Under the pieces are notes generated by a model. That model had not been told where the DNA came from, did no database searches, and saw only the letters and a program-made list of their open reading frames with translations. Shown here in pieces: positions 10,389 to 45,800 of a stretch of 60,790 nucleotides of DNA; within the stretch, counting starts at the first letter, position 1; the number at the start of each line of letters is the position of its first letter. This DNA comes from Octopus bimaculoides (taxonomy: Eukaryota): assembly GCF_001194135.2 (NCBI RefSeq), contig NC_068996.1:30276817-30337606 (forward strand), given 5' to 3'. A program made the translations under genes and the position numbers.

Positions 10389-10974
10389 TTTCCCTGAATT
10401 TGCTGATTTGCAAAATGAACATTTCACTTACAGTTTGGTTTCTGTATTTTTATATGTGAATTTGTTTCAGATGCTTTCAAATTACTCCTATTTATTTATA
10501 CTGATGTGACAAATGTGTGATGGATACAGGTACGGGTGTGTGCTTAAGGAGTTTGCTTTGAAAATATATAATAGTAGGGTAAGATCCCACTGTGTCTTTT
10601 ACTGTAAAAGACTAATCCTTTGTGGTTGGAATTTGGTACGCAGAAACAGTGCAGAAGACTGTCTTGTATATGTGGATATGTGTACCTGTGTATTTTTAAT
10701 GGTATATATATCAATGAAAGATGTAAATACCAGCATAGAAACACACAAAAAAAAAAAACAGAAAAACAGTGCTCTTTGAGCAAAGCCTCTAATAATATTT
10801 CTTCTACACTGAGTTATAGACACTCCTCTGTTACTCTCACTACTTTGCAGCTTATTGGAAACTTCTAATGTGCCATAGTGTTGTACACCAACTGTCAAAT
10901 AAAATAAATTAAATTAAAAATGCTTTGCAAATTTTATAAATTATGTTTTTTTTTTGTTTCTTTTTTTTATACAG

Positions 10975-11076
10975 GACATTCTGTTCCCATATGTAGCAGA
11001 TAATTTGCAGAATTATCTAGAAACACACTTTGATGATGATGGTTGTTTATGTGATATAGAGTCTTTGAGGCAATTG
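10975..11076 (+). CDS. ENOPH1: ENOPH1 coding exon 2
   Basis: Boundaries ttttatacag| and |gtaaga. Encodes DILFPYVADNLQNYLETHFDDDGCLCDIESLRQL; phase 0/0. Confidence 0.95.
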
Positions 11077-14000
11077 GTAAGAGTATTCAAACATGATAAT
11101 CATCTTTCTTGTATTATTAATTGCTGCAAGTGGAATCGGAGTCAAGCTATAGATGTATCCCTGGAAGTAAACTTTTGCTGAACTGTTACATTTAGTACCT
11201 CTTATTAATAAACTGTTTCATATTTTAATTCTATTAGCCATTCTGAAAACTTGACATTCAGAGATTTGATATGAACTCGTTTTCAGTTACTACAAAACAG
11301 ATATTTAAATCACACTAGAACTGACTACAGAGCTTAAACATTGACATTCATTCTTTTATATGTGATGATCTCCCTTCCTTTGTTCCATAAATGGTTTCTA
11401 ACTTTATGAATTTCAGTGATGTTAGCACTTCAATATTTGCAAATCCTGAAGAGTGCCATATCAACTGGTAGATGTGATTCTATGGAAAGCATATTGTAGG
11501 ACATTAGAGAGAAATTCAATTTGCATTGCACAGCCTTAAAGCAACTAAGGTGATTGGAATAAAGACAATAACTTGGTAGGTGGTATGAGTACAGAGGTTT
11601 CACTTTTTACAACAATATCTGGTTGCATATCTCCATAGATTGGAATTGGCTTCCATAGACAAAGCTTGAAGAGTCTAATAAAAATAGAAACTACCTCTAA
11701 AGTACATTGTTTGGCAGTAATGGAAAAGGAAGCCCTAAGGCTAAAAGGTGGATCATCTTGAATTACAAAGAGGAGAATAATGAAAAGTTACAAATATTTA
11801 GTTGCAGATTTTTCTCTTTTTTCTATTTTTTAGTAAGACACTAAACTGCAAAAACTTAGTGTTTTGATAATATCAGATGGTCCAACAGTCTTTGTCTTTA
11901 TTTATTTCAAACTGTCAATTTAGTGGAAGGCTGAGTTTATTTTTCACACTTAATGTGAAGAAAAATAACATGGATGGCTTCAGTAATTTACTTTCACCTT
12001 CAATAATTAAAAGAAACTTGTATAAATGTATCATATCTTGGTAGCTGTTGTTTGTTCTGAATTACTGGAATATAAAAAACACATGAAATTAAGAATGTTT
12101 AAACTTTTAGCATTTTAAATTTAAAAAGGCCATATCTGACCAAATATTCTACCTATTTTATGTTTAAACTGGCCAGACCCAGACTCTTACTCCCACCCTA
12201 CAATGTCTTTCTAAAAATAAACTATTACATCATCAAAATTCTCAAAGCTATAAGTCCTGATTAATTCAAAGAAGTGTGAATAAATATGCATTACATTTGA
12301 CAGAGTTATCTGGATACTAAAGGATTAATCCTTATTTTCTAAATAAAATTAGTTTTTCCTTATTATCATTACTGCTATGATGATATAAAAACAAGTTTAG
12401 GGCAACTGTCTTATTACTTATGCATTTCTTTTTTTTTTTAGCATTATTTTAATAAAATTTAGCAATTTTGACTTAAGAAGTTAACCTATTTGATTCAAAC
12501 ATAAACTTTCAGTTCACTTCATTTTCTTTTATGGATAGAAATATCAAAGTTGTGTTGATCAGAATATGGCTGGTTTTAATTAACTGTTTCTGTTCCAGGC
12601 AAAGCAGGATGAAGAATCAAAAGTTATTGGTGCTACAAGGATTTCAAACACAGATGCTGACAAAGATGTCATAATTCAAGATGTTGTTGCAAATGTGAAG
12701 TGGCAGATGTCACTGAATCGTAAAACTACAGCCCTGAAACAGTTACAGGGTCATATATGGAAGGAAGCATATAAGCTTGGAGAAATTAAAGGAGAGTATG
12801 TAAATTAATTGTTATTTACTTGTTGTATTATTCATGATATTGTTTCTTTTCTCATCCTTAATCTTCCCATAGAAATGATTGCAAGGACTAAAATTTATGA
12901 TACTATAGGTTCTCTTCTCTATAAAGTTATTTACAACTTGACATTTTGTTATAATTTCAAAACTAAATACTTTTTGTGGTACCAATTTCTTTATCTTCCT
13001 CAATTTATTTCATTTTGTCATCCTCATTATCATCAACACTGCTATTATCATCACTAGTCACTCTAGTGACTTCAACTTTGTATAAAGAGATGGTCTATCA
13101 GTTTGATGTCAGTGGTTGCCTTTCACTGATGCACCTTTAGCTGTTTGTAGGATTATTGCTACACCAATCAATTTCTGAGTAGAAACTTGTATAGTGTTTA
13201 AATAACCTAATATTTACAATGTCAACACTAACTATTCCTGGTGCACTTGCAGTTTTCTCTGCCTTAACAACCTTGATTGCTTTAACTGACAATGTTGAAA
13301 CTTATATTGTTTGTCCTTTTGTTTCATTATAAGATACATCCCTATCTCAATTCTAATTTCTTCAACAATATATAAGAACACTTCCATTCCACTGTCTTTT
13401 CACTTAGTCTTAGTGACAAGGGCATTGATGTTCTTTCACACACACATGCTTTACCCCAATTATGTTTCACATGAAAAACAGTCTGGCAATTTAATTTACT
13501 ACATTTTTTTCATGTTCATGATGTACACTTGAGCTCTTTCATTATTCCTACTTTGCCTCCTGACTTCTCTCCTTGCCACTCTTTTATTACTTCAAGATTT
13601 TTCTAACATCTTTTCAATCTGCTCCTTCACACTGTCCTGCTACCATGTTATCAGCCATCTGACAGGAGCCTTATCATCATCATCATCATCATCGTTTAAC
13701 GTCTGCTTTCCATGCTAGCATGGGTTGGACGATTTGATTGAGGACTGGTGAAATCTGATGGCTACACCAGGCTCCAATCTGATTTGCCAGAGTTTCTACA
13801 GCTGGATGCCCTTCCTAACACCAACCACTCTGAGAGTGTAGTGGGTGCTTTTACGTGCCACCGGCATGAGGGCCAGTCAGGCGGTACTGGCAACGGCCAT
13901 GCTCAAAAAGGTGTTTTTTACATGCCACCTGCACGGGAGCCAGTCCAGTGGCACTGGCAATGACCTCGCTTGAATGATTTTCAAATGTGCCACCAGCACA

Positions 14001-17000: not shown

Positions 17001-20000
17001 TATCCCATGGGAGAGTTGAGAATATTCTGAAAATTTGACATTGTTCGAGTTTCCTTGAACATTTCCTAAGCCAGTGTTGGTTTCATCTCATTGAACCAAA
17101 GGCAAAGAGACAATCCATGCAGTAGAAACATCCCTCTCCACCTGCTCCAAAGAAGGCCAAGGTCATTTCATCTTTGGGGAAGTGATGGCCTCAGTTTTGA
17201 GAGATGTAAACACCCTTGTGTTTATTAACTGAGGGCCACACCATCATTGGAGAGTACTTTACCAACTTGCTGAGACAGTTAGAAAAGGCTATCAAGACCA
17301 TGTGCCCAGGAAAACTGACAAAAGAAGTCTTGTTGCACCAGGACAATGTTCTAGCACACAAGTCCTTCGTTTCAATGGATGCTGTGCATGATTGTGACTT
17401 TTGAACTAGTTGATCACTCTCCCTATTCTCTTAACTTGGCCCCATCTTACTATCATCTGTTCCCCAACATGAAAAAAGACTTGGCTAGGAATAATGTTTC
17501 ACAGAGATGATGATGTCATATCTGCTGTTGATGACCTCATTTGGTCACATTCCATGAGAATATCTTGGTCAGCATATGAACTTTTTGACCAACTATTGTA
17601 TAACAGATTACCTATTCTTGTCCCTCTATCATACTTTAGCCCTTCAACATCTGGCACAAAGCACCACCACCCACTCTGTCTCTCAAATGCTCTTCTCCCT
17701 CGGGAGGACCTTTTACTCTTTTTTTTTTCTGCCAACCTCACTATTGCTGGTGGCACAAAAAATACACCCAGTACACTCTGTGAATTGGTTTGCATTAAGA
17801 GCACCCAGCTATAGAAATTGTATCAAAGCTTACACTGGAACTCAGTGCAGCCTTATGGCTAGCTGGATCCTGTCAAACATCCAGTCCATGCCAGCATGGA
17901 AAACAGATATTAAATGATGATGATGGTGACCAGTGCTGGAGACGCACACTTTCTGTTGGGGTAGAGGCATCAAACATTAGAGTGAGCTGAGTTTTAATAA
18001 AGCTGGTAAATGGTATTTAGCAGCCATTCTAATCATTGTAGAACATTTGATACAGCACATTTGGATGGGAGTTACTTAGTCTACTTTGCTTTTATACTCC
18101 CTCTCACCTCAAACTGCATACACACATGCAGTTGATAGTACAGATATTAATTGTATTATCTTATTCCTAGTAACTGGGTATGGTTGCTGTTAGCAAATTC
18201 TTATGAAGTCATGTCAACAATTTGAACTGGCTACTGTACCTACATTCATCCTAACACAACACTTTGAATGGCTATACATGTGTTTGGTTGCTGTGACAAC
18301 TCTGGGAGGAATGCATATTATAGTATTTTGGCCAGAAATTTATACTGATTCATACTTTGCTTCAGTTGAAGTTTGTTGGTTGTCAGTAAATCTTTTATGA
18401 AAGTGTTATCCCTTGATTGCTGCAGCATGTGATATGATTTCCTTTCTGTGGGATGCTCAAGACATTATTTTTTCAGTCTTCAAGAACAGATTTATAGTTC
18501 CAGAACTAGTTACATATTTTGCACATTCTGCTAACAACACATTCTCTCTGGACTATAAATCTTGCATTAATTCCATCAAAGCTAAACAATTATTTTTCAA
18601 CCTCTCAAACTTCAAAACAAATGAACTTCAGTGGTTAAGATTGAAAAGGCAAGGGGTGGGAGACATAACAAGGATGATGAGAGGAAGATTGAGACTAAGT
18701 TTCTCACAGAGTTCAGAGGCAGCAGGTTTTATGCTCACAAAAGCTGAGCAATACTTCATTGTGAACCTCACCTGAGTTTCAAAGATTATCGATGGTTATT
18801 CATAGCCTAAATTATTTTCTGGTCCTCAAGAGATGATTGAGCTGCAGACCTAGCAATAGGATGTATGTTTATAACATACATCCTAGCAATAGGTGATAGT
18901 GAGTGCTAACATTTTCAGTGATTATGAGGACTCTATTTGTGTATTGTAGACAGAGTGCAATGATTTTTTTCTTGACGTGACTAAAAGATACAAAATTAGC
19001 ATGATACCTTTGAAGATGGTGTGGAAAAGACCATACCTTAGGACATACCAGAGTATGGCAAGATTTGAAGCTTTATTTCAAATACAAATATTTGTTTCTT
19101 TGTATTTTTTTTTTAATATTATAACTCTCTGATTATTTGAAATGTTTGTTCAGGCTTTTCAGTGATGTTGTACCTGTTTTGCATCAGTTGAAAGAAATGG
19201 GCATGAAACTTTACATTTATTCTTCAGGAAGCATTGAAAGCCAAAAACTCCTTTTTTCTCACATACCAGAAGGAAATATTATTGATGTGAGCATTATATT
19301 TTTTTAAATATGAAATTTTGATAAAATTTTGCTTTAAAAAATATTTGATAAGCATTTTGGTGCATGTGGATGTGTAAGTGTATGAATAGATATTTTTGTT
19401 TGTCAATCTAGGAAAGCTGGCTGGCTTCAAACATTTTCCGGCATTTCTTGCTGGACTACAGGCATAAGAACTGGATTAATGTTCAGTTACAATTGTTGCA
19501 GACCACTGATTGAATAAAAGGAAATTGTTCTGTGGTTGAAATACTTGAACTAAATGTTTAATATAGCACTAGTACTAGAAGTGGAATAAGGAATGTCACC
19601 AAATTTAAAGAATATAAAGAGCTGTAAAGATGAGCAAGTGATTAAAGTACATAGCAAAACGAAGCTTGCTAACCAGGCAGAGTTTTGTTTACTGTTCAGA
19701 TGTACTGTTACATATGTATTAAACTTGAACACTCTTGAACCTAATAGAAACTGAGAAACAGTATCTCTTGTAGCCAATTTTGTCCAAGTAAGGTAATAAT
19801 CTCTAAATCTATTAAACAACAAACCGTTTGGACGTGCCTTTGCAGTGGACTAGAAGCCAATAACACTATCAGGAAGTCATTGTTTACAAACCAGTGAATG
19901 CAAAGAAAATACAAACTCACTCACACAAACATACACATATTTATACACAATGGGCTTCTTTCAGTATTCGTCTACTCAATACATTGATTACAAATATATA

Positions 20001-23000
20001 CCATATGTTTTTTAGATTTCCTCCTTAGGGAAAACTGAACAATATTTTCGCCATAAACCAAATATATCAAGGAAATAATCATTTATTTTTAAAAAAAACT
20101 TTTCTTCAATATCTAATATGGCTCAATTCCACATTATTATATTTTATGACAATTATGTAAGTGCTTCCCTTTTAATACTTCTTTACTTGAGTTTGTATGT
20201 ATTTTGTAAAAAATTTTCCCCTCTACTAATTCAGGGATGATACAACCTGTAGCCAACAAATTAGTAAAGAGACTCCCTTTATTACAAAATACAGACCACT
20301 TTTGAACGCGTCTACAATAAATGACATATCCACTGCAGCCTTAGAATAACGCAAACACACGCAAATGTTAAAAATGATACATTCAAGAGATTCCCAAGAA
20401 TTCATAAAAAAAGTCCCAATCACTGCTATAATCCACAACGAGCCACTTTTAGGTCACTTGACCATTTAACATCCTACTACTATCATACCACCTGCATTCC
20501 TTTATTATTCTCTCTTCTCTTTTCCTTTCTTCTTCTTTGTTTTCTTCCTCTCCGCTACCTCCTTCCTTACTTTACTACTATTGCTGTTTAGAATAACACC
20601 TACGCAAATATTATAAACAATACATTCAATAGAAATGTCTCAAGAATTCAATCACTACTACCATCCACAACAAGTCACTTTCGGGGCACTTGACCATTTA
20701 ACATCCTACTACTATCATGCCACTCCTGCATTCTCCTCTTCCTCCTCCTTCTTCTTCATCTTCTTCTACATCTTCTTTGCTAAGAATTCATAATAGGCGC
20801 AGGAGTGGCTGTGTGGTAAGTAGCTTGCTTACCAACCACATGGTTCCGGGTTCAGTCCCACTGCGTGGCACCTTGGGCAAGTGTCTTCTACTATAGCCTC
20901 GGGCCGACCAAAGCCTTGTGAGTGGATTTGGTAAACGGAAACTGAAAGAAGCCGTTCGTATATATGTATATATATATGTGTGTGTGTTTGTCCCCCCACC
21001 ATCGCTTGACAACCGATGCTGGTGTGTTTATGTCCCCGTAACTTAGCGGTTAGGCAAAAAGAGACTGATAGAATAAGTACTAGGCTTACAAAGAATAAGT
21101 CCTGGGGTCAATTTTCTCGACTAAAGGCGGTGCTCCAGCATGGCCGCAGTCAAATAACTGAAACAAGTAAAAGAGTAAAGAGAATGACCTTGAACCCAGA
21201 AGAGTAAACAAGAGAGACAGAGGCAGGCAGAAACAAGGAAAATACCCCTTGTATTTGAATACTATGCAAATATTCTTTTAAAAAGCATTTCTTTTAACTT
21301 TTCCAAAATTTGTTTTCCATACTTACAGTTGAAAAAGTCTCAATGACTGAAACAGGTACTGAAATGTTTTTTATTAAATTATTTTACAATNNNNNNNNNN
21401 AATAATAACAATAAATGGAGCAAAACGCATATAAATAAAAGTTCCTTTAATTCCTACATATGTCTCAAAATATATGTGCACTCTACTCCAAAGAAGTAAG
21501 AGCTGCTGGAATTGCACATATATTCATCCAAGACACATAACTAGTAATTTGGTTAGGAGTATCTCAATTAAGCTTTCCAAACTTTCCTCTAACTCCCAAA
21601 TTTTCAATAAGGAGGCTGACTTTTATAATTCAGCCTTATTGAAGGCAGGTTATAAAGACAAGGTAAGGTACTTTGGCTCTTTTAGTGATCTTTCTCCTTT
21701 TACACAACATGATGCCCCCTCTGCTGGCATAGATAAACCCACTTCTATTTCTTCCCATTTTTCTCACTTTACTGAGAAAGTGGAACATGCTTATCACTCA
21801 CATAAGAGAGGAGGCCCAACTGGCTCTAAACACTTTAACAAATACAAAAATATTTATTTATTTAACCACACTAATACTGTATCTAGATCTGTTGATAATA
21901 TCTGGCTCATCCTCCCGTTTGGGAAGCAAGTTAAATCAAATTTGATCCGCCAGTTCCAAGACGCGGTGAGTAGGAACTTTCCTAGGGGTTCCCACTATTA
22001 CCCAATAATCAACTCGCATAAGGTTAGATTTGGGTTTTCTAATACTAAAAAGTTGTTACAAATTATTTCTTCCCATAATTTCAGGCTTTTAGATTCATCT
22101 CTAGACAGCCATCCCAGTTATGATGATAATAATAGTAATGTTCATATCAATAACAATAATAATTACTCTAATAATTTAACACACACATATGATGGCAATA
22201 GTCATTTAGGTATAAATATAGGTAGTATGTGCAATATTAGGAAACATAACAATAGCTGTAACAATAATATTAGCATCTCGGAATTAAATCCTAATAAAGT
22301 TAAGTTTTTAAGTGCAAATGCCAAGAATGTGGTTTATCAATGCAAGGTAATGTCTCATGCTGATGTCTCGTTTTACGTAGGTAGCTCATCGACGCAGGTC
22401 TCCAAGAGAATATCAAACCATTATTCTTCATATAGGGATAGAAATAAAGCTAACACCACGGCCTAAGTAAATTTATTTGGGAACTGAAAGATTGCAATAA
22501 ACAATTCTCTTTGGAATGGTCTATATTGGCTACCTCGGTTCCCTACGACAAAGGTAAGGATTTTTGTCCTCTTTGTAACTTAGAGCTTTTCCATATTCTG
22601 TTCTCCAAGAATCGCCTAGTTAACCAGATAACACAGAGAGTGTATCGATGTCAGCACTGGCAGAGACATACCTTCATTTATTATCATTAATTCCATTCTT
22701 CCAACTAGTTTAAGGCTTTAGGTATTATTATTATTATTATTGTTTTTTTTTTGTTTTTTTACCAAATGTCCTCTGAATAATATCTTTTAATATAGTCTTA
22801 AATAATATCTATTTCTGCATCCATAGCCACTTGTCTTTTATTTTCCCCTTCTATAGTTGGTTAAGTAATTCCTTCCCAGTAATGCTACATTAGCTGTCTT
22901 TGTACCACTAGTAACTTTAACTAAATATACCTGATCTTCTCCTTGTAAGCATGTATATTATTGTTGTTATTATTTCTCAACAAAATATCTTGTACCTTGT

Positions 23001-25471
23001 TCTACCACTGATTTGTGTTAACATCCGTATATTAATATATTACAAGGCAATGATGTTTCATTTATCATGATTACATTCTTCGCTTCAAATCAGTATGTTA
23101 TTAACTTTAATATTTTTATTATAATCTTAAACAATATCTATTACTGCCTCCATCGCCACTTGTCCTTTATTTTCCCCTTCTAGAGTTGGTTAAGTAAATT
23201 CTTCCTAGTATTGCCACATTGGCTGTGTTTGTACCATTAGTAACTTTAACTAAATATTCCCGATCTTCTCCTTGTAAGCTTACATATTATTATTATTATT
23301 ATTATTATTTCTCAACTAAATATCCTGTACCTTGTTTTACCATTAATTTGTGTTAATATCCGTATATTACTATAATATATTACAAGGCTATAATGCTTTA
23401 TTTTTTATATTTACATTCTTCGCTTTAAATTAGTGTTATTATTTTTTTCCTTAAGGAGAATTTTTTTTTTTTTTTTATATATATAGGATGAACTCTCTTG
23501 ATTCTCTCCCTTCCTTCACATTTGATTAGCTTATAGTTTACGGCTTCAGTTTACTTTGCTGTGATCCATTTTGCCCCCCTCCCCCATATTTTAACAATTT
23601 AATTTAAACCTTTAGTATAGTGTTTACAGCACCCCCTCTCGTTATAACTCTATGTAAACCAGCATTCTTACTTCTAACGGTCACTTACTTGGCCATATAA
23701 TATTATAATTCGTAAGTGACCGTATCATTTCGCTTTTGTCTTGCTTCTATATATTGGTTCCCTGACGATGAATATATATGCAATTCCAGCAGCTCTTACT
23801 TCTTTGGAATAGAATGCATATATATTTTGAAACATATGTAGGAATTAAAGGAACTTTCATTTATATGCATTTTGCTCCATTTATTGTTATTATTCATATC
23901 TACTCAAAATGCATCACTTTAACTTGGTATCTCTACCTATATAACGAGTCTGATATCCTTTCTTTGTGTGATTTTTGCTACCCATGGTAACCATTAACAT
24001 ATTTACATTGTCNNNNNNNNNNNNNNNNNNNNNNNNNNNNNNNNNNNNNNNNNNNNNNNNNNNNNNNNNNNNNNNNNNNNNNNNNNNNNNNNNNNNNNNN
24101 NNNNNNNNNNNNAACTTGTCTACTACCTTCAGAATCGTTCCTTCAACCAAGATAGCTGGTTTTTACATACGGATTTCTTGATGCAGGCTGGAACATTACA
24201 ACAGTCTTGTCCAGGCTAATGCCAAGTCCAAATGCCTTGCAAGACACAGAAATGCCATTCATGAGTATTTGCATGTCATCCACTGTATGAATGACTAAGT
24301 CACAGTCATCTGCATAAAGGAGGTCACGAATAATAGACTGGAGAACCTTTGAATTGGCAGCAATTACTGTGCATGTGTACTGACATCGCTTCTCTACAAC
24401 AAGGGATTCACCTAAGCCAGTTGTGGAAATTCCCACCCCTGAGAGACCAATACTGGTGATTCCTGGTGGGCCAGGGACTTTCTCTGACTTCATATCTTTA
24501 ATTGCTTTATCTACTAAGCTACTGTCAATTCAAATAGCCAGCCTCTCTGTTGGGTCCACATTAGGCAGGCTCCCCTTATCCCATGCATTCTCAACCTTTC
24601 ATGGTTGGCATTTCCAAGCTTCCTTCTTTGCAGAGTCACTAACTGCAGCTGAGCCATTATCCATGTGAATATACTTCTACAACATCACGGTTTTCTCTGA
24701 CACACTCTCTTGAAATCTGAAACTCCTCTAGCCTTTTTGTCCCTCTCTCATATTCCTTAATCCCTTTACCCCCTCCCTCTTATCTCTCAATCTCTTTTGC
24801 TTTCCTTCCTCACCTTCCTTGTACCTTGTTTCTCTCTCTCTCTCCCACTCACATTCTGTAATCCCTCCCTCTCGTTATTTGGTCCTGATTTCTTTCCTCT
24901 CTCACATATTCCTTAGTCCCTCCACCTTCTTCAACTCCTCTCCTCCTCGACCACGTGATCACTGTCCGGTTTATGCATTGTCGTTCTTTTTCGGCTGACC
25001 GCGTTCAAAGTCAGTTGCATCTGTTGTTCTGTCTCACCACCCGGTCAGTAAGATTTTTCCATCTCCTTTTTCCTTGCGCTAGCTTACTACACCGTCTGAT
25101 AGTCAAAAGACTGTTTTGTTTTATTTTTGTTGTATAGCCGAAAGGCTTTTGTCCATTGTATATGTATAATTCTATTTCTTATGTTACATTTGTCTGATAT
25201 TCGAGGGACCCTTTCTGTTTGTTATTTCCTTGTGTTGGTATATGTACATTAGTTTGCCTTGCTCAGGGGCTTAATGCCATCAGCTTAAGCCCTTGGTTGA
25301 ACTGGTTTTGAGTAGTATCGGAAAGGATTGGGCAAAACTATGTAGACATTCCAGACTCTGACTGCGAATGATCCGTGTATCTTGTTTTGTCCTGTTTGCC
25401 ATTATTGTGCTATTGTCCTTTTCCTGCTTGTAATGTTTTGATGATTTCTGTCTGTTTTGTTTTTACCTTTG

Positions 25472-25523
<52 letters not shown>

Positions 25524-28500
25524 TATACAATGGGCTTCTTCCATTTTGTCTACCAGATCCACTCTTAAGGCTTTAACAGGTTGGATCTATAATAAATACT
25601 TTCTCAAGGTGTCATGCATTGAGACTAAGCCTAAATCTTATGGTTGAGAAAGACCTAACCACACACACCTTCATATGTATCCCCTTGCTTTTGTTTTTGC
25701 AATATCAGCCTAACCACACACACCTTCATATGTATCCCCTTGCTTTTGTTTTTGCAATATCAGCCTACATTTCTGTTTCTTCAACCTCAAACACTTGAGC
25801 CTTTCATGGGATAAGTAGAAGTACAGGAGTATTTGCTAGTTAACATCTAAGATCTTGCACATTCCTGACTGAAATGTGCACCAGCTTCTTGTTTATAGAT
25901 TCCTAGTTTATATAGTTGAGTCCCATCCTTTCAAACTGTCTATCTTCACTATCTTACGATGCTAGTCGTTGCTTTCAAGTATATCTTGTCATGTTCACTT
26001 CTCATTTCTCAAATCCATCTCCTCACATATCATCTTTCCTCAACATCACAAAGAACATTTTAGTTTTATTGCATGTGACAATTTCCCCCACCTTCTATGC
26101 CACCCTCTCCCCACCAAAAAAACATTGGGCTTAAGCCAGCATCTGTTCCATTGTTCAATTTTTCTTTTCCTCTTTCCCACCCCTACCACCATTATTACAG
26201 CTCCAAATATCTTTATTTGCATCTTTATTATTTCATTCTTATTTTTATTATTTTATTTTTTGTTGCTTTATTTTATTCGAGCTGTTCCAGGTTTCACCCA
26301 GGTTTCACCCAGGTTTCACCCAGGTTTCACCCAGGTTTCACCCAGGTTTCACCCAGGTTTCACCCAGCAAGTTGGACATTTTACTGTGGGTGTTATTTAT
26401 GATTACTAATGATTTAGTGTATGTTAAGGAGGCCAGAATCCAAGAACTAAGATTCTATTAAATTTGTAATGTTTCAGATTTGATACAGTTTTAAGACACT
26501 GGTATTTTCAAGTTCACAATATTTTTCTCAGGATGTGAGCAATAACTATGAGAACAATTTTTTGTAGCTCTGATATCTTGGAGGTTCCCAGTATTTGGCC
26601 ATAATGTTTAAGAGTACTTTTTAGTATTGCCCCAAAGTTCTAATGATTACAGGTACAGTTTTTTTTAGATGTCACATTTTTGTGACCTCTATTTCAAGGT
26701 CCTTAATTTACTTAATTTTCCTCATCCCAGGGTCTTACAGGCCCACACCTCCCACACCCTCAGAGTTGGCACGCTCAACGTTGGCATGCTCAATGTCGGC
26801 ACGCTGAAAGGTAGGTCTGGTGAGATTGTTGAGATGCTTGAACGGAGACATGTAGATTTGTGCTGCATCCAAGAAGTAAGGTGGAGAGGAGGTTCCGCTA
26901 GGTTCCTCACAGGCAAAGAACACAGGTACAAGATTTTCTGGGCAGGGAACACTGACAGGGTCGGGGGCGTGGGTATACTTCTTGTGGAGAAATGGGTTGA
27001 TAAAGTAATCAAGGTAGTCAGAGTATGTGACAGTACTTAAGATTAGATTAGTGCTTCACCATAGGTTAGGTACCGTTATCTCAGCCTATGCCCCTCAACC
27101 GGGGCTACTGGATGGGCAGAAAGACCAATTTTATGACACCCTATTGCAGACTACCTCATTGACGAATGGCAGGGACCTTCTCTTTGTGGCTGGTGATTTC
27201 ATTGAACATGTTGGACAACATGCAGGGGGCTTCTATGGCGTACATGGAGGCTATGGCTTCGGTTCCTGCAATGAGGAGGGAACCAGACTGCTGGAGTTCT
27301 GTGATACAAATGATCTTATGGTTTGCAATACCAACTTCAGGAAACCTGCCTGTCACCTAGTCATCTACCATTCCGGCAGACACACTTGCCAAATCAACAT
27401 CCTCACCAAAAAAAGGGAAAGAGGACTGCTTATAAATGCCAAAACCTTCCCAGGCAAAGAATGTACCCCTCAACACGGATTAGTAGTTAGCAACTTTGGT
27501 ATCAGGGCTAAATGGATGCCCAGAAGTAGGCCAGCTTGGAGGAAAAGGGTCTGGAAACTTAAAGATCCTGCAAATGGACAGAGATTTAGAGACGTGTTAC
27601 TCGAAACCTTCAACGAAACAGAAGGGGATATAGCATCAGATAATGTGGAAGACAACTGGAGGTTTCTACAGGACAACCTGCTGAGAGCCATTGAGCAGAT
27701 CTGTGGATGGTGCAAAGTCCCCTCTCAACCCAAAGTAACATGGTGGTGGAACAATGTGGTTGACAGGGCTATTAGACAAAAGAAATAGGCTTGGAAGGAC
27801 TGCAAGAACAGAGGTAGCAGGGAATTGTATCAGACTGCCAGAAGGGAAGCTAGGAGACAGGTTTATTTAGCCAGAGGCGAAGCAGATAAGAAAAAATTTG
27901 CCAATGTTCTGCACCATGAAGACCAAAGACTTGAAGTATTTCATGTTGCAAGACAGTGTGTGAGAGAGAATCGTGATGTCGTAGGAGAAAAATGTGTCTG
28001 CATGGATGATGGCTCACTTGCACTAAACGAGGCTGCAAAGAGAGAGGTTTGGAGATGCCACTATGAAAGGTTGCTCAATAAACAGAATGAATGAGAGAAA
28101 GAGAGTCTGCCGAATGTCGACCCAACAGAGGGACCAGCTATCCTAATTGACAGTACCTTGGTAGATAAAGCAATTAAGAGTATGAAAACAGGGAAAGCCC
28201 CCGGCCCATCAAGAATCACTGCAGAGATGCTCAAAATATCTGGCAGTGTCGGCTATAGCCTNNNNNNNNNNNNNNNNNNNNNNNNNNNNNNNNNNNNNNN
28301 NNNNNNNNNNNNNNNNNNNNNNNNNNNNNNNNNNNNNNNNNNNNNNNNNNNNNNNNNNNNNNNNNNNNNNNNNNNNNNNNNNNNNNNNNNNNNNNNNNNN
28401 NNNNNNNNNNNNNNNNNNNNNNNNNNNNNNNNNNNNNNNNNNNNNNNNNNNNNNNNNNNNNNNNNNNNNNNNNNNNNNNNNNNNNNNNNNNNNNNNNNNN

Positions 28501-31500
28501 NNNNNNNNNNNNNNNNNNNNNNNNNNNNNNNNNNNNNNNNNNNNNNNNNNNNNNNNNNNNNNNNNNNNNNNNNNNNNNNNNNNNNNNNNNNNNNNNNNNN
28601 NNNNNNNNNNNNNNNNNNNNNNNNNNNNNNNNNNNNNNNNNNNNNNNNNNNNNNNNNNNNNNNNNNNNNNNNNNNNNNNNNNNNNNNNNNNNNNNNNNNN
28701 NNNNNNNNNNNNNNNNNNNNNNNNNNNNNNNNNNNNNNNNNNNNNNNNNNNNNNNNNNNNNNNNNNNNNNNNNNNNNNNNNNNNNNNNNNNNNNNNNNNN
28801 NNNNNNNNNNNNNNNNNNNNNNNNNNNNNNNNNNNNNNNNNNNNNNNNNNNNNNNNNNNNNNNNNNNNNNNNNNNNNNNNNNNNNNNNNNNNNNNNNNNN
28901 NNNNNNNNNNNNNNNNNNNNNNNNNNNNNNNNNNNNNNNNNNNNNNNNNNNNNNNNNNNNNNNNNNNNNNNNNNNNNNNNNNNNNNNNNNNNNNNNNNNN
29001 NNNNNNNNNNNNNNNNNNNNNNNNNNNNNNNNNNNNNNNNNNNNNNNNNNNNNNNNNNNNNNNNNNNNNNNNNNNNNNNNNNNNNNNNNNNNNNNNNNNN
29101 CTTCTGCCACATTCCAGGGAGAAAAACTAGAAGTAGTTGATAGCTTCCGTTACCTAGGTGACCAAGTCAGTAGTGGAGGAGGGTGCGCTGAAAGTGTAGC
29201 TGCTAGAATAAAAATAGCCTGGGCAAAGTTCACAGAGCTCTTACCTCTGCTGGTGACAAAGGGCCTCTCACTCAGAGTAAAAGGCAGACTGTATGACGCA
29301 TGTGTACGAACAGCAATGCTACATGGCAGTGAAACATGGGCTATGACTGCTGAGGACATGCGTAAGCTCGAAAGGAATGAAGCCAGTATGCTCTGATGGA
29401 TGTGTAATGTCAGTGTGCATACTTGACAGTGTGTAGGTACCGTGAGAGAAAAGTTGGACTTAAGAAGCTTCAGTTGTGGTGTGCAAGAGAGATGATTGCG
29501 CTGGTATGGTCATTTGGCGAGAATGGATTGGGATAGCTGCGTGAAAAAGTGCCACACCCTAGCGGTTGAGGGTACCTGTGGAAGAGGAAGACCTGGGTTG
29601 AGGTGGTGAAGCACGATCTTTGAACATTAGGCCTCACCAAGGCAATGACTAATGACCGAGACCTTTGGAAATATGCTGTGCGTGAGAAGACCCGGCAAGA
29701 CAAGTGAGACCATAACCCATGGCCTTTACCAGGAGTGTAGCCAGCCTACTTATGCGTACCTTTCCTTCTTTGGACATAAACCCTGCTTGTGAAGACCTGT
29801 TGACGCAAGTGAAATCGAAATTGAATCAAATTCGTTGACTGGCACCCATGCCAACTTTCCTTCATTGGACACTAAACTCAGTTTGTGAAGACCTGTTGGG
29901 GCAAGTGAGATCGAAACTGAACCAAGTTTGATGACTGGCACCCGTGCCAGTGGAGCGCTAACAGCACCATCCGTGCGGGATCACTGCCAGAGCAGCGGTC
30001 TCGATCCTGTGCCAGTGGCACGTAAAAAGCACCATATGAGCGCGATATTTCCAGCTTAGCCTTACTGGCACTTGTGCCCGTGGCATATGAACAAAACATT
30101 GGATTGACTCCTGTGCAGGTGGCACATGAAATACATCATTTGAGCGTGGCCGTTGACAGTACCACTGGACTGGCCTTCATGCCGGTGGCACATAAAAAGC
30201 ACTCACTACATTCTCAGAGTAGTTGGCATTAGAAAGGGCATCCAGCTGTAGAGACTCTGCCGGATTAGATTGTAGTCTGGTGTAGTCATCTGGTTCGCCA
30301 GTACCCAGTCAAATCGTCCAACCCATGCTAGCATGGAAAGCTGACATTAAATGATGAATTTTACAAAAGTGTTTTAGTCTGCCAGGATTGACATATCTAT
30401 GAGCATACATTTTTGTCAATGTGAATTTTTATGACAATATCTGGTCTTTTGGTCTGTATTTCACAATCAGTTTGGATACTAAAGTCCCAAAGAATGGTGA
30501 TGTATTTATTTTCTACTATTTAACCTCTGAAATGTCATATGTTAGTGCAATATGTTTCTTCTAAGAATGACAAGTTCCAATTTCTTTGATAAATACATTT
30601 CCATTGTTATTATTTCCTGATAGAATTTTCACCATGTTCACAGCCATATCTTCAGATTTGTTTAGACTACAGTTGGTTGTCTATGAATTTGTTTACCATT
30701 TACTGAAAAGCTTTCTATACTACCTTGTAAATATATGGGTCAACAAAATCGTTTTGTTGTTTAGTTTTGTTTAGTAAGCGTTAGAAATTTATTAGGTTGT
30801 GGGAAATGTTTGGTGTATCCCCTTTATAATTGCTTTTACTCTGATTTGGGAGATATATGAGGAATAGAAGAGGATAAGTGAAGATTGTCGAGTTCATTTT
30901 CCCTTCACATTCTTTCTTGGTTGGAAATACATAGGAAAAATAGTAGTCATGTATATAATGACACTGTTTTGGTACTACAAAAAGCAGGCTTAGTTTTAAA
31001 ATTCTAGTACTGATAGATGCATGTGTGTATATATGTATATAGCTGAATAGTTCTTGCCTCAGTCTTCCAATCTTTAATCCAAATAATGTTATGGGCCTTC
31101 TTCAACATAGATTATGTTTTTGTAATGCAGTTCTCTATAAATATAACCTTGTTTCATACATTCAAAATTTTAAAGACCATTTTCAAAATTGGTAACAGAA
31201 TTATTAAGATGTGCAATTTTTATGGGAATAGTAAGTGACAAGACTTATTTGTTGAAGTTTTCTACTAGCAGAAAATGTGAAAAAAATATCAGTATTGAAT
31301 TTCATTCAAAATATTTTTTTTATTTTTGATGTTGATTTCTTTAAAAAATTATAACGATTTCTTAATTTTATTTCCATAAAGTTATTCTCTGGATTTTTTG
31401 ATACTCTAACTGGCAGTAAAGTGGAAAGTGAGAGTTACAAGAAAATAGCTGAAGAAATAAATGTAAAAGCTGATGAAATTATGTTCCTTACAGATAATCC

Positions 31501-41880: not shown

Positions 41881-42843
41881 GATCTGTAAAAACATTCTTG
41901 AGAAGGTAGCTGACCAAAACAGTATATATGGGATAATATCCCTTACAGAGCAGAAAAATCTGTCAGCAACTAGCCTATCTAAATTGCATAAGAATTTGTT
42001 AGTAAAGCAGTTTAGCTTAATGGGAGAGCACTTCACTAGAAAGCAAAGGGATGTGAGTTCGATTCTCATGGCTGGTTGCAAGGGATATTATCCCATATAT
42101 ACTGTTATGTCAGTATTTATACATTGCAAAAATATATCTTTATATATATATATATATATAAACAATATATGAGTATATGCATATATATATGTACATGTAT
42201 GTACATACTTTCATCTACATGTACACATAGATACATAACTGGGTACATGACGTGGCAAAAGAACATGGACAAAATGATAAACAAGGTACAACAAACAAGC
42301 AGGCCACATAGAAACATTTCCTTCATCAGCTGCCACCATTAAAACACTGGCGTTTCGAAGAATTAAGGCAATACACATCGTTAAAATGGTTCTTCCCACG
42401 AACACAAATAAAATTTTTTTCGTGGAGGGTAGTGGCGGACAGAAAACGAAACGGTGGAATAAACAAACAAAAAGGCTGTACAGCCAGACGTGAAGTGTGT
42501 ATGTATTGAACGCTGTGAGGCACGAACAGGAGGGGCTAAGAAGTACGTGCAAGCTTGGGGAGTCCAAGAACGAAAAAAATAGCAGCCAGACACACGTGAC
42601 CAGCGAGGAGTAGGGAGAAAGAGTAGCAGAGGGAGAAGAAGGGGAGGAAGTAGAATATAAGAAGTGAGCAATGAGAGGTAGAGAGGGAGAGAGATAGTAG
42701 TAGTAACGGTGAGAGGCGAAGGATGAGCAACAAGAGAGAGAGATAATAGTGACAGGGAGAGGCGAAGAACAGTAGAGGGAAGAATGAGAGGGGGAGATAG
42801 ATATAGAGAGAGTCGCGTTAGAAAAATAGTTAAAACTTACTGT

Positions 42844-45800
42844 ATGATGGCTGTCCACTCGTGACTGAGGAAGACCATTGCCGACCTTCAGGAACATTGT
42901 GCGCTTTAGGACTAACTTATATTTTGCATTTACAGCTCCATTGGTGACAAGCATACACGACTGCAAACATTGCAGACCAAGCTTTCCCCATCCACTATAC
43001 GAGCCATGCGCTTTCGTGCAGCTCGCTTAAGTTCTTCATGCTGGATACATGCTCTCTCAAAAGTATCAATCCCCTCCTTAACCTGCTTCTTCCATCTGTG
43101 GCGATGACAGGCATTGTTCTCCCAGTCAGTGTCCTGCATATCACAGGCCTTTAATGAGGACTTGACTCAGTCCTTAAAGTGCAGCCTTGGTTTCTGCCGG
43201 AGTGTCCTTCCATTCACAAGTTCTCCATAGAGCATCTGCTTAGGAATCCTACTATCCTTCATTCTAATAAGGTGTCCAGTCCAATGTAACCGGTGCTTGT
43301 GCACCATCGCCTCAATACTCAAAATATCAGCTGTCCTCAAGACCTGTGTGTCTGGAATTTTTGGGGTCCAGCCAACATTGAGAATGTGCCGGAGACATCT
43401 CTGATAAAAGCATTCAAGGAGCCTTACCTGACGTTTGTACAGAGTCCATGTCTCATATGAGTAGAGGAGCGATGTTAGTACACATGCACGGTACACAGCA
43501 ATTTTTGTTTGCCTTGCGATGCCATGCTGGGACCAGACACGAGACTGAATAGACCGGAAGGAATTAGTTGCTCTCTGCAACCTGAAACATATTTCCTCAT
43601 CCAGGGAGCAAGAATGGCTGAATGTGCTGCCCAGGTAGACAAACTTGTCTACTACCTTCAGAATTGTTCCTTCAACCAAGATAGCTGATTTCACATACGG
43701 ATTTCTTGATGCAGGCAGGAACATTACAACAGTCTTGTCCAGGCTAATGCCAAGTCCAAATGCCTTGCAAGACACAGAAATGCAATTCATGAGTACTTGC
43801 ATGTCATCCACTGTATGAGTGACTAAGTCACAGTCATCTGCATAAAGGAGTTCACGAATAATAGACTGGAGAACCTTTAAATTGGCAGCAAAACGGCGAA
43901 GATTAAAGAGACAACCAGAAGATCGATATCTGACATATATTCCCAGAGAGCTAACCTTAGCAAAAGTATGAGTAAAAACAGCAGCAAAGTACAAAGAAAA
44001 GAGAGTTGGGGCAAGGATGTCACCCTGCTTGACACCATTCTCTACAGGAATGGGTCCCGCCATGCCACCACCAACATTGACCCAAGCCTCCATCGCATCA
44101 AGAAATGATTTAATTATAGATACAAAGTGATCCGGACATCCAAGTTTGCCAAGTATTTTCCATAGTAAGGCCCTATAAATCAATGAATACCTGGACAAGA
44201 TCCATATTCTGCTCATAGCACTTCTCCTNNNNNNNNNNNNNNNNNNNNNNNNNNNNNNNNNNNNNNNNNNNNNNNNNNNNNNNNNNNNNNNNNNNNNNNN
44301 NNNNNNNNNNNNNNNNNNNNNNNNNNNNNNNNNNNNNNNNNNNNNNNNNNNNNNNNNNNNNNNNNNNNNNNNNNNNNNNNNNNNNNNNNNNNNNNNNNNN
44401 NNNNNNNNNNNNNNNNNNNNNNNNNNNNNNNNNNNNNNNNNNNNNNNNNNNNNNNNNNNNNNNNNNNNNNNNNNNNNNNNNNNNNNNNNNNNNNNNNNNN
44501 NNNNNNNNNNNNNNNNNNNNNNNNNNNNNNNNNNNNNNNNNNNNNNNNNNNNGCTCCTTTTCCTTTATATAGAGGAAGAATAATTGCATCCTTCTAGTCC
44601 TTAGGCATTGCACCATCCCTCCAGACTGCACTAATGAGTTCATGAAGGGACTGTGTGATGTAATTACCACCAAATCGCAAGACCTCAGCACAAATTCCAT
44701 CCTTTCCAGGTGCCCTACCAAGATTCACTTTACTTATTGATGTCATCACTTCATCTGTTGAGGGCGAAGAGTCTAAGGAGCCAATGATAAGTCTTTGTTG
44801 CATAGTAATAATCATTGTTTCACCCACAACTGACTCATGGTTTAGGAGTTCAGAGAAGTGTTTGATCCAGCAACCTGTGATTTCTGTTGATTTAGTAAAC
44901 CGGGTGGAAGACTCCTTGGAAAGCAAAGGGGCTGATGTGGAGCACTTAGGTCCTTAACCTCGCTTCATAAAATGGTAGCCTGAACATCACGAGCAAGATC
45001 CTCCCACCAAGTGTTCTGCATCTTCCTGACAGATCGTTGCAGTAGTGATTTTACACTGTTATAGTGGGCAAGTGCTAGACTTCACTGCTCAGTAGACAGT
45101 TCTCTGTGAGCATGGCGCTTTACCACCAATAGTCACTGAACTTCAGCATCATTTTCGTCAAACCAGTCTCTGTGTTTGGCAGTAACATATCCCAGGGTTT
45201 CGGCTGCACATTGTAGAACGTGGTCTTGAAAATCCTCCCATGCTGCAGCAGTTTCAATGCTGGACAAGCGAGTCTGAAGTTCTTTCCTAACCACATCATA
45301 TACCTTGTGGACATTTAGACGGCGAGGAATGCAGACTGGTCCTCTTCTCTCTTTCATTCTAATTAGCATTCAGAACTTTGCTCGCACCAGACTGTTGTCT
45401 GTCCAGCATTCTGATCCATGGAAGGACTTGACATTACAAATGTCATAAATGTTGCGCCTGCGGATGATGACATAATCCAGCAAGTGCCAAACTTTGGACC
45501 TTGGGTGCATCCATGTTGTTGTGTGATCACCTTTGTGTATAAAATGAGTGCTTGCGATGTAAAGTCCATGTTCTTCGCAAAGCTCCAGTAGCATGAGACC
45601 ATTGCTATTCATTTTCCCTACTCCAAAACTTTCTAGAGAGTTCCATGTTTGCCAGTCTGTTCCAACTCTGGCATTAAAATCCCCCCAGTAGAATGACTTT
45701 ATCAGAATTGGGGATTTTTCTAAGTATGGCTCTCAGCTGGGTATAAAAGATTGTTTTATCTTCATCACAGCTAGTCAAAGTAGGTGCATAGGCACTTATT

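What the first reader, a model, noticed from the sequence alone, without database searches (positions are those of the whole stretch)
23754..23848. Intact type I hammerhead ribozyme inside ENOPH1 intron 4, sense to the pre-mRNA
Seen: all canonical core nucleotides are present (CUGACGA, GAAA, A15.1-U16.1, GUA triplet). Stem I is 8 bp, stem II is unusually long (13 bp, bulge, 6 bp, 16-nt loop, U.U first pair), and stem III is a minimal palindrome (ACAUAUGU). Known: Penelope-like elements carry type I hammerheads with minimal palindromic stem III that can cleave as dimers. Inference: ENOPH1 nascent RNA could self-cleave after A23840, linking a retroelement ribozyme to the processing of a methionine-salvage gene.
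Basis: partly seen in the sequence, partly recalled or inferred. Interest (0 to 1): 0.85.

Follow-up and report, generated by a model that had tools for sequence, protein, structure and literature searches.

The report
Retroelement hammerhead relic in ENOPH1 intron
The motif is a real hammerhead-ribozyme sequence, but it is the usual 3'-end ribozyme of a dead Penelope-like retroelement that landed in an ENOPH1 intron, a well-known kind of passenger that probably does not cut the host transcript to any useful extent.

Summary
Window 23754-23848 (+) carries a complete type I hammerhead core (CUGACGA, GAAA, A15.1-U16.1, GUA), an 8-bp stem I, a 60-nt stem II and the palindromic stem III ACAUAUGU. 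It lies sense in an ENOPH1 intron.

It is not a chance motif. Dinucleotide shuffles give about 0.017 such motifs per window. It sits downstream of, and on the same strand as, a 5'-truncated, frameshifted Penelope-like element (PLE) ORF at 21525-22666. An inverted truncated copy of the element's 3' end lies at 21401-21528.

I collected 65 loci of related PLEs, which look like the Hydra clade. Nearly all with sequence downstream of the ORF carry a hammerhead there. A covariance model built only from those loci ranks the candidate first in the window (19.3 bits, E about 0.006).

Rfam gives no hit, but it also misses every U/U-type family member I tested, so that negative says nothing.

Self-cleavage of ENOPH1 RNA is unsupported and unlikely. 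There is no tandem partner, monomer stem III is unstable, stem II is an outlier, and an upstream antisense copy in the same transcript can trap the motif. This is a new member of a known kind, of low interest.

The parts
23754..23848 (+). Type I hammerhead motif. Stem I 23754-23761 with 23841-23848; core CUGACGA 23762-23768; stem II 23769-23828; GAA 23829-23831; stem III ACAUAUGU 23832-23839; A17 at 23840 (predicted cut after 23840).
   Evidence: Sequence. Only descriptor hit in the window, about 0.017 expected by shuffles. Top hit of clade model R1, 19.3 bits, E about 0.006. Second hit of R2, 19.3 bits, E about 0.03.
21525..22666 (+). Remnant of a Penelope-like element ORF, probably Hydra clade: the region after the RT core, the linker and the C-terminal GIY-YIG endonuclease. 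The RT core is missing (5' truncation), there is a frameshift near 22463, and there is an N-rich low-complexity insertion.
   Evidence: Protein search hits P0001 and P0002, E 4e-19 and 1e-18. Alignment A2. tblastn of P0001/P0002 on the window. P0002 carries RVT_1 plus the DKT and CxCX5C motifs that define the Hydra clade (sequences against PMC8557442).
21401..21528 (-). Inverted, 5'-truncated copy of the element's 3' end. It equals the reverse complement of 23767-23894 and abuts the truncated ORF. It holds the 3' four-fifths of the hammerhead but starts at G8 and reads GAGA instead of GAAA. An N gap lies directly to its left (21391-21400).
   Evidence: Inverted repeat I1, 128 nt, 95% complementary. 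Alignment A1. blastn. Homology to the PLE protein starts at 21525.
23767..23894 (+). Right arm of the inverted repeat, the 3'-terminal region of the PLE. It overlaps the hammerhead from G8 onward.
22776..23441 (.). Two copies of a 329-bp tandem repeat, followed by a T-run plus (TA)n at 23462-23486. It lies between the end of the ORF and the hammerhead and accounts for much of the unusually long spacing.
   Evidence: Tandem Repeats Finder; repeat families D2, D5, D10; sequence.
21323..21364 (+). Second hammerhead-like motif, 2433 nt upstream on the same strand: core UUGAAAA (U3-A8 covariant), stem II AGUC/GACU, GAAA, stem III ACAGGU, A17, and 5 of 6 stem I pairs. Probably the ribozyme of another, older PLE copy.
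   Evidence: Top hit of model R2, 19.9 bits, E about 0.02; 12.3 bits with R1; relaxed descriptor hit. L001:4581-4626 has the same UUGAAAA core. Its flanks are not similar to those of the main motif.
19155..19289 (+). ENOPH1 exon (human residues about 131-175), upstream of the intron that holds the motif.
   Evidence: tblastn; TIGR01691 156.7 bits on the joined exons.
31376..31495 (+). ENOPH1 exon (human residues about 173-212), downstream of the intron that holds the motif.
   Evidence: tblastn; TIGR01691.

Best explanation
The motif is the 3'-terminal hammerhead ribozyme of a Penelope-like retroelement, most likely of the Hydra clade. The element inserted in sense into an ENOPH1 intron and is now dead: its ORF is 5'-truncated and frameshifted.

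In a live element the ribozyme sits in the terminal repeat (pLTR), a median of about 110 nt after the ORF in the relatives I collected. It is thought to cut multimeric or read-through element transcripts after H17, leaving 5'-OH and 2',3'-cyclic phosphate ends. It works poorly alone and needs either a second copy (dimeric stem III) or the element's own protein.

This copy keeps every core nucleotide and the clade's signature: U/U flanking stem II, an AC...GU palindromic stem III, and A17. It has an outlier 60-nt stem II.

Shown: the sequence anatomy, the PLE context, membership of the clade's hammerhead family, and sense placement in the ENOPH1 intron.

Inferred: that it is a neutral passenger whose cleavage of ENOPH1 pre-mRNA is absent or very inefficient.
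For: (1) All motif parts are present. It is the only descriptor hit in the window, with 0.017 expected by chance.

(2) A PLE ORF remnant lies 1088 nt upstream on the same strand. An inverted 5'-truncated copy of the 3' end abuts it. This is the arrangement described for PLEs in PMC8557442, Fig. 2 legend.

(3) In 65 loci of related PLEs, model R1 finds 53 hammerheads at E<=0.002. Nearly all are on the ORF strand, 59-297 nt (median 110) after the protein match. Where two flank an ORF they are 2405-2497 nt apart.

(4) Family signature: U/U at 10.1/11.1 in 26 of 38 distinct hammerheads, GAAAC...GU palindromic stem III of 8-10 nt, and H17 mostly A. All three stems covary: score 0.77 against 0.19 in shuffles, 0 of 500 shuffles as high. 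The candidate has all of these features.

(5) Model R1, built without the window, ranks the candidate first of about 121 kb searched (19.3 bits, E about 0.006).

(6) Between the two arms, the three differences that fall in stem II all keep pairing: 23778 A>G with 23819 U>C gives A-U to G-C, and 23809 A>G gives U-A to U.G. Chance of a paired double hit is about 0.05 (my estimate).

(7) Against host-transcript cleavage:
- Single metazoan PLE hammerheads gave no detectable cleavage in vitro, and dimers gave low cleavage (PMC4209133).
- The Anolis PLE hammerhead cut only with its ORF protein, and no RNA-seq reads ended at its cut site (PMC11167929).
- Monomer stem III costs +0.6 kcal/mol, and the hammerhead-compatible fold is about 0.7% of the predicted ensemble.
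- The upstream antisense arm can form a 128-bp duplex of -179 kcal/mol covering G8 to the 3' strand of stem I.

(8) An intact core needs no selection. At the 2.7-5.5% divergence seen between the arms, 15 core bases all survive with probability 0.43-0.66.
Against: - No Rfam hammerhead hit, even at E<=10 on 301 nt. The same models miss the family's clean members.
- The clade-model score (19.3 bits) is at the bottom of the family range (20-54 bits).
- Stem II (60 nt) and the distance from the ORF (1088 nt) lie outside the family ranges.
- The 329-bp repeats and the T/(TA)n run in between leave open that the hammerhead-bearing end and the ORF come from two separate insertions of the same family.
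- No other copy of this exact family could be examined, because the host genome is not available here. Family-wide conservation of the long stem II is therefore untested.
- Activity was not measured. Nearest-neighbour folding ignores tertiary contacts in the core.
Confidence: 0.85

Rival explanations
1. One reading: the hammerhead is active in the ENOPH1 pre-mRNA, as a monomer, in trans with other PLE transcripts, or helped by PLE protein from live copies. Its cleavage after 23840 affects ENOPH1 RNA processing or output.
For: The core is complete, stem I is long (8 bp) and the motif is sense in the intron. A second sense hammerhead-like motif lies 2.4 kb upstream. From my own knowledge, not checked here: conserved sense-strand intronic hammerheads are known in amniotes (HH9, HH10).
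Against: - There is no partner with a complementary stem III in the window.
- Single PLE hammerheads were inactive in vitro, and the tested Anolis PLE hammerhead cut only with added ORF protein.
- The local ORF is dead.
- A cis antisense arm competes for the same sequence.
- The hammerhead-compatible fold is a minor part of the predicted ensemble.
- The intact core is explained by the young age of the copy.
- HHR-bearing retrozymes are very common in introns, 42-44% of copies in Xenopus, so intronic placement alone signals nothing.
- From my own knowledge: ribozyme cuts inside introns need not disturb splicing (exon tethering, Dye et al. 2006).
Confidence: 0.06
2. Chance motif: an AT-rich palindrome in an intron that happens to be flanked by CUGANGA and GAAA, with no ribozyme ancestry.
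For: No Rfam hit. The first stem II pair is non-canonical. Stem II is built on a (TA)n-like palindrome of a kind common in this window. A genome of gigabase size would hold hundreds of chance matches at 0.017 per 60 kb.
Against: - It lies on the correct strand downstream of a PLE ORF, inside the element's terminal repeat.
- It carries three features that my descriptor did not demand but the clade shows: U/U, AC...GU palindrome, A17.
- It is the top hit of an independent clade model.
- The Rfam negative is shown to be uninformative.
Confidence: 0.04
3. Vestigial ribozyme: the region's live role in the element is the long 3'-terminal hairpin, for example as a recognition structure for the element's RT. 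The hammerhead core is a decaying leftover that is no longer catalytic in this family because stem II has grown to 60 nt.
For: Stem II is far longer than in any of 38 relatives. The hairpin keeps its pairing between the two arms. The Naiad clade of PLEs thrives without canonical hammerheads (PMC8557442). Hammerhead mutants did not affect insertion in vitro in the Anolis element.
Against: All roughly 15 core positions and both flanking stems are still intact in the only full copy available. Long stem II variants (36 and 44 nt) occur in relatives with otherwise perfect motifs. There is no direct evidence for an RT-binding role.
Confidence: 0.05

Closest known systems
Hammerhead ribozymes in the terminal repeats (pLTRs) of Penelope-like elements (Cervera & de la Pena 2014, PMC4209133), specifically those of the Hydra clade (Craig et al. 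2021, PMC8557442)
   Same: Type I topology and a full catalytic core. An extra nucleotide after A9. A small palindromic stem III (AC...GU). Location near the 3' end of a GIY-YIG-bearing PLE, on the ORF strand. An adjacent inverted 5'-truncated copy. Most genomic copies belong to truncated, dispersed elements.
   Different: - Stem II is 60 nt, against 6-8 bp in the 2014 consensus and 10-44 nt in the relatives examined here.
- 10.1/11.1 is U/U, typical of this clade in my sample, rather than the G-C stressed in 2014.
- The motif lies 1088 nt from the ORF, against 59-297 nt, with a 329-bp tandem repeat in between.
Rfam Hammerhead_1 (RF00163): canonical metazoan type I hammerheads (Schistosoma, newt satellite, retrozymes)
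   Same: The same core and type I topology, a short palindromic stem III, and action as dimers in tandem repeats.
   Different: Canonical members have a 4-bp stem II with G10.1-C11.1 and loop-loop contacts with stem I. The candidate scores below E=10 with this model. A canonical tandem pair in L008 scores 35.9 bits.
Conserved intronic hammerheads of amniotes (HH9, HH10; Rfam RF02275, RF02277)
   Same: A sense-strand hammerhead inside an intron of a protein-coding gene.
   Different: Those are stable monomers, conserved across species and not embedded in a recognisable young retroelement (my knowledge of the literature; not tested here). The candidate has no such evidence and gives no Rfam hit.

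Membership tests
Hammerhead ribozyme, type I (motif level) | Conserved core: C3 U4 G5 A6 N7 G8 A9, G12 A13 A14, A15.1-U16.1, H17 not G | tested here: met
   CUGACGA at 23762-23768, GAA at 23829-23831, A23832-U23839, A23840 (descriptor).
Hammerhead ribozyme, type I (motif level) | Three helices around the core, with the open ends in helix I | tested here: met
   Stem I 8 bp, stem II 13+6 bp, stem III 2-3 bp as a monomer. Monomer stem III is not stable (+0.6 kcal/mol).
Hammerhead ribozyme, type I (motif level) | Watson-Crick 10.1-11.1 pair, usually G-C | tested here: not met
   U23769 opposite U23828, followed by a G.U pair. U/U is nevertheless the majority state in the related PLE hammerheads, 26 of 38.
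Hammerhead ribozyme, type I (motif level) | Mg2+-dependent self-cleavage 3' of H17 | not testable with these tools
   Needs in vitro transcription and cleavage assays.
Rfam Hammerhead_1 (RF00163) and other Rfam hammerhead models | Score at or above the family's gathering threshold | tested here: not met
   No hit at the gathering score or at E<=10 on 301 nt. Control: the same search misses clean family members in L002 and in 10 other loci. It finds only a canonical G-C-type tandem pair in L008.
Hammerheads of Hydra-clade-like PLEs (model R1/R2 built here) | Significant score with a covariance model built from relatives only | tested here: met
   R1: top hit of the window, 19.3 bits, E about 0.006. 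R2: 19.3 bits, E about 0.03. E-values are rough, and the score is at the low end of the family (20-54 bits).
Hammerheads of Hydra-clade-like PLEs (model R1/R2 built here) | U/U flanking stem II; GAAAC...GU palindromic stem III of 8-10 nt; H17 = A, U or C | tested here: met
   U...U present, ACAUAUGU (8 nt), A17.
Hammerheads of Hydra-clade-like PLEs (model R1/R2 built here) | Stem II total length 10-44 nt; position 59-297 nt after the ORF, on the same strand | tested here: not met
   Stem II is 60 nt. The strand is the same, but the motif lies 1088 nt after the end of the protein match, of which 666 nt are a tandem repeat.
Penelope-like element, Hydra clade (Craig et al. 2021) | Single ORF with RT followed by a C-terminal GIY-YIG endonuclease | tested here: inconclusive
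   The window copy keeps only the post-RT region, linker and GIY-YIG, aligned to residues 353-621 of P0002. The RT core is missing through 5' truncation. The relative P0002 has RVT_1.
Penelope-like element, Hydra clade (Craig et al. 2021) | DKG motif changed to DKT; linker CxCX5C; CxxC next to the conserved E; short unit under 3 kb; (TA)n targets | tested here: inconclusive
   In relatives: DKT and CxCX5C are seen in P0002, and CxCX5C in P0001. Unit spacing is 2.4-2.5 kb. (TA)n follows the L002 element. In the window ORF: CPLC-x2-E is present, CxC has degenerated to CNI, and the DKT region is missing. No phylogeny was run.
Penelope-like element, Hydra clade (Craig et al. 2021) | pLTR or inverted-repeat architecture, with an inverted 5'-truncated copy next to the element | tested here: met
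   The 128-nt inverted copy of the 3' end abuts the ORF remnant, as in PMC8557442 Fig. 2 legend.

The most novel reading that the evidence does not exclude
Both sense-strand hammerheads that flank the dead element (21323-21364 and 23754-23848) are active in vivo, perhaps helped by protein from live PLE copies. ENOPH1 transcription would then feed a roughly 2.4-kb ribozyme-excised, possibly circularised, retroelement RNA, or ribozyme cutting would modulate ENOPH1 output. Alternatively, the 60-nt stem II marks a functional structural variant of the PLE hammerhead.
Probability: 0.04. Interest if true: 0.5.

Novelty: new member of a known kind. Interest (0 to 1): 0.15.

Why it matters
The biological weight is small. 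Hammerheads in PLE terminal repeats occur in thousands of copies per invertebrate genome, many of them in introns, and this copy belongs to a dead element.

Two practical points came out of the check:

- Rfam's hammerhead models miss this whole U/U-type subfamily. None of 11 or more clean members tested was found. 'No Rfam hit' therefore cannot be used to dismiss such candidates in a scan, and a clade-specific model is needed.
- A complete core in a young retroelement copy is what neutral decay predicts, so 'intact' should not be read as 'functional for the host gene'.

If the host-gene reading were true, it would be a rare case of a retroelement ribozyme acting on a housekeeping transcript. 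Nothing here points that way.

Tried and rejected
- **Rfam cmscan** on the whole window at gathering score and on 301 nt at E<=10 gave no hammerhead. I rejected this as evidence after positive controls failed in the same way.
- **The apparent 23-nt deletion** of stem I and CUGAC in the left copy, seen in the MAFFT alignment, is an alignment artefact. The left copy simply ends there, at its 5' truncation point, and PLE coding sequence follows.
- **Pfam** on the window ORF gave no GIY-YIG or RT hit, even at E<=10. Homology was established through the protein database instead.
- **Viral contigs** held no relatives.
- **Exact-protein look-ups** of two window ORFs, tried to identify the host genome, found nothing on record. 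The host species stays unidentified.
- **blastn** of the element against the 65 loci found no nucleotide-level relatives, so conservation of the long stem II within its own family could not be tested.
- **A tandem partner**: the only other copy of the region is the inverted truncated arm. The upstream U3-A8 motif has stem III ACAGGU, which would extend pairing with ACAUAUGU by no more than 3 bp (by inspection).
- **Other model hits**: 52835-52879 (-) is AT-rich and lacks the GAAA/stem III half, so I treat it as spurious.
- **ENOPH1 exon 1 and last exon**, searched by motif, were not found in the window.
Full report
**1. Observation**

The sequence at 23754-23848 (+) reads UUGGUUCC / CUGACGA / U-GAAUAUAUAUGCA-AUUCCA-[16-nt loop]-UGGAAU-AGAA-UGCAUAUAUAUUU-U / GAA / ACAUAUGU / A / GGAAUUAA.
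- an 8-bp stem I with two G.U pairs;
- the CUGACGA and GAAA boxes;
- a stem II of U.U, 13 bp, a 4-nt bulge, 6 bp and a 16-nt loop;
- the palindrome ACAUAUGU as stem III;
- the GUA triplet with A17 at 23840.

A descriptor scan I wrote finds this as the only hit on either strand of the window. 300 dinucleotide-preserving shuffles give 0.017 hits per window with relaxed stems and none with stems as long as observed. On its own the 95-mer folds better than shuffles (z = -2.6).

**2. Gene context**

tblastn with a recalled human ENOPH1 sequence finds four colinear + strand exons at about 10960-11118, 12590-12799, 19155-19289 and 31376-31495, covering residues 24-212. Their joined translation scores 156.7 bits against TIGR01691, acireductone synthase/enolase-phosphatase, whose cut-off is 128.1.

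The motif is therefore sense in the 12-kb intron between the third and fourth detected exons. 'Intron 4' is right if one further exon lies upstream. I could not find that exon or the last one in the window.

**3. What surrounds the motif**

The region 23767-23894 is repeated in inverted orientation at 21401-21528: 128 nt, 95% complementary.

Directly to the right of that left arm begins an ORF on the + strand (21474-22466, continuing in another frame to about 22666). The protein database returns two relatives for it, P0001 and P0002, with E 4e-19 and 1e-18.
- P0002 is a 631-aa protein with a reverse transcriptase domain followed by a GIY-YIG-type C-terminus.
- It carries the DKT and CxCX5C motifs that Craig et al. 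2021 give as marks of the Hydra clade of Penelope-like elements.
- The window ORF aligns only to residues 353-621 of P0002. The RT core is missing, there is a frameshift near 22463, and there is an N-rich insertion.

The element is thus a dead, 5'-truncated PLE. The left arm is an inverted, even more truncated copy of its 3' end, an arrangement described as typical of PLEs. The '23-nt deletion' suggested by the first alignment is just the truncation point of that inverted copy.

**4. Do relatives carry a hammerhead at this place?**

The P0001 locus (L002) has a clean type I hammerhead 104 nt after its stop codon, followed by (TA)n.

A scan of metagenome contigs with the protein alignment returned 63 further loci. 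A regex and descriptor pass found hammerheads downstream of most ORFs. I aligned 27 distinct ones (A3), checked the structure, and built model R1 without any window sequence. All three stems covary, with a score of 0.77 against 0.19 in shuffles.

R1 finds 53 hammerheads at E<=0.002 in the 65 loci.
- Nearly all are on the ORF strand, a median of 110 nt (range 59-297) after the protein match.
- Pairs flanking an ORF are 2405-2497 nt apart.

The family signature is:
- CUGA[A/U]GA;
- a U on each side of stem II, in 26 of 38 distinct sequences (G-C in 6, A-U in 3, G.U in 2);
- stem II of 10-44 nt in total, median 17;
- GAAAC...GU palindromic stem III of 8-10 nt;
- H17 mostly A.

One relative, L001, has the U3-A8 covariant core UUGAAAA.

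**5. Scoring the candidate**

- R1, run with filters off on the window, ranks 23756-23846 (+) first: 19.3 bits, E about 0.006.
- R2, rebuilt from all 53 locus hits, gives it 19.3 bits, E about 0.03.
- The score is at the bottom of the family range because the 58-nt interior of stem II is treated as an insertion.
- The candidate shares the U/U, the AC...GU palindrome and A17, none of which my first descriptor required.
The real outliers are the 60-nt stem II and the 1088-nt distance from the ORF, of which 666 nt are two copies of a 329-bp tandem repeat followed by a T-run plus (TA)n.

**6. Rfam**

No hammerhead model hits the candidate, either at gathering score or at E<=10 on 301 nt. Controls show why.
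- The clean L002 hammerhead is also missed at E<=10.
- Among 11 loci with strong family hammerheads, RF00163 detects only a canonical G10.1-C11.1 tandem pair on the other strand of L008 (35.9 bits), and none of the U/U type.

**7. Will it cut ENOPH1 RNA?**

This cannot be measured here. The evidence points to 'hardly'.

(a) Published tests: a single Schistosoma PLE hammerhead gave no detectable cleavage. Dimers and trimers gave low cleavage, mostly at unphysiological Mg2+. The Anolis PLE hammerhead cut only when its ORF protein was added, and no RNA-seq reads ended at its site.

(b) The window holds no second sense copy of this sequence. The upstream hammerhead-like motif has a stem III (ACAGGU) that cannot extend a dimeric helix with ACAUAUGU beyond 3 bp.

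(c) As a monomer, stem III costs +0.6 kcal/mol. The hammerhead-compatible fold (-19.7 to -20.3 kcal/mol) loses to an MFE fold of -23.1 that pairs core bases, and makes up about 0.7% of the predicted ensemble.

(d) The inverted arm is transcribed 2.2 kb earlier in the same pre-mRNA. It can pair with 23767-23894 in a 128-bp duplex of -179 kcal/mol, against -22 for either local fold. That would bury everything from G8 to the 3' strand of stem I.

(e) The intact core needs no selective explanation. With 7 differences in 128 nt between the arms, 15 core positions all survive with probability 0.43-0.66.

(f) HHR-bearing retrozymes, which the same preprint relates to PLE pLTRs, are common in introns: 42-44% of copies in Xenopus, although depleted relative to intergenic DNA.

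**8. A hint of structural constraint**

The 7 arm differences are all transitions. The three that fall in stem II keep its pairing: 23778 A>G with 23819 U>C turns A-U into G-C, and 23809 A>G turns U-A into U.G. I estimate about a 0.05 chance of a paired double hit. This suggests the long hairpin matters to the element, or reflects repair within a DNA palindrome. It does not bear on the host gene.

**9. Comparison and verdict**

The motif works like, and by sequence belongs to, the hammerheads of PLE terminal repeats (PMC4209133), in the Hydra-like clade for which hammerheads were already reported (PMC8557442). It is a further member with an unusually long stem II.
- I found no paper linking ENOPH1 and hammerheads.
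- The PLE-hammerhead identity has my confidence at 0.85.
- The host-gene cleavage idea has about 0.06.
- Interest is low, 0.15.

Noticed in passing
window 21323-21364 (+): A second hammerhead-like motif with the U3-A8 covariant core UUGAAAA, stem II AGUC/GACU, stem III ACAGGU and A17. It is the top hit of model R2 (19.9 bits, E about 0.02) and lies 2433 nt upstream of the candidate on the same strand, just left of an N gap. This is close to the 2.4-2.5 kb spacing of hammerhead pairs in relatives, but its flanks are unrelated to the candidate's. Likely a remnant of another PLE copy.
   Followed up: partly
window 58700-58744 (+): A solo hammerhead-like motif: AUUGUG CUGAUGA [14 nt] GAAAC ACAU GU C CACAAG, 14.8-16 bits. 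Its stem II is degenerate and no PLE ORF lies nearby. Probably the end of a heavily truncated PLE.
   Followed up: partly
window 21401-21528 and 23767-23894: The two arms would form a 128-bp, -179 kcal/mol duplex within the ENOPH1 pre-mRNA, the kind of long intronic dsRNA that editing or dsRNA-sensing enzymes act on. All 7 differences between the arms are transitions. At 5 of them the right arm has A where the reverse complement of the left arm has G.
   Followed up: partly
L008 2636-2682 and 2917-2963 (-); L045, L020, L003, L021, L038, L017, L042, L010, L041, L061, L002: Rfam RF00163 detects only the canonical G10.1-C11.1 tandem hammerheads in L008 (281-nt spacing, retrozyme-like). It misses every U/U-type hammerhead of the related PLEs, so the Rfam seed does not cover this subfamily.
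   Followed up: yes
L001 471-516 (-) and 4581-4626 (+): A marine-metagenome contig with two full PLE ORFs head to head. Each is followed by a hammerhead with the U3-A8 core UUGAAAA, showing that this core covariation occurs in the clade.
   Followed up: partly
window 22776-23441 and 23462-23486: Two copies of a 329-bp tandem repeat (83% matches), then a T-run plus (TA)n, lying between the PLE ORF and its hammerhead. No hammerhead lies inside the repeat. Its origin is unknown: an expanded 3' UTR or a separate insertion.
   Followed up: no
window 42006-42077 (+): A tRNA-like sequence just above the Rfam tRNA threshold (30.1 bits against 29), in a TE-rich stretch. Possibly a tRNA-derived SINE head.
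   Followed up: no
window 24143-24493 (-), 26669-27788 (+), 43167-46120 (-), 48889-50733 (-): Several ORFs that look like fragments of non-LTR (LINE-type) retrotransposons; RVT_1 hits were confirmed only for 24143-24493 and 43167-44216. Two are near-duplicate copies at about 43-46 kb and 49-51 kb, interrupted by N gaps. The ENOPH1 introns are largely made of retroelement debris.
   Followed up: no
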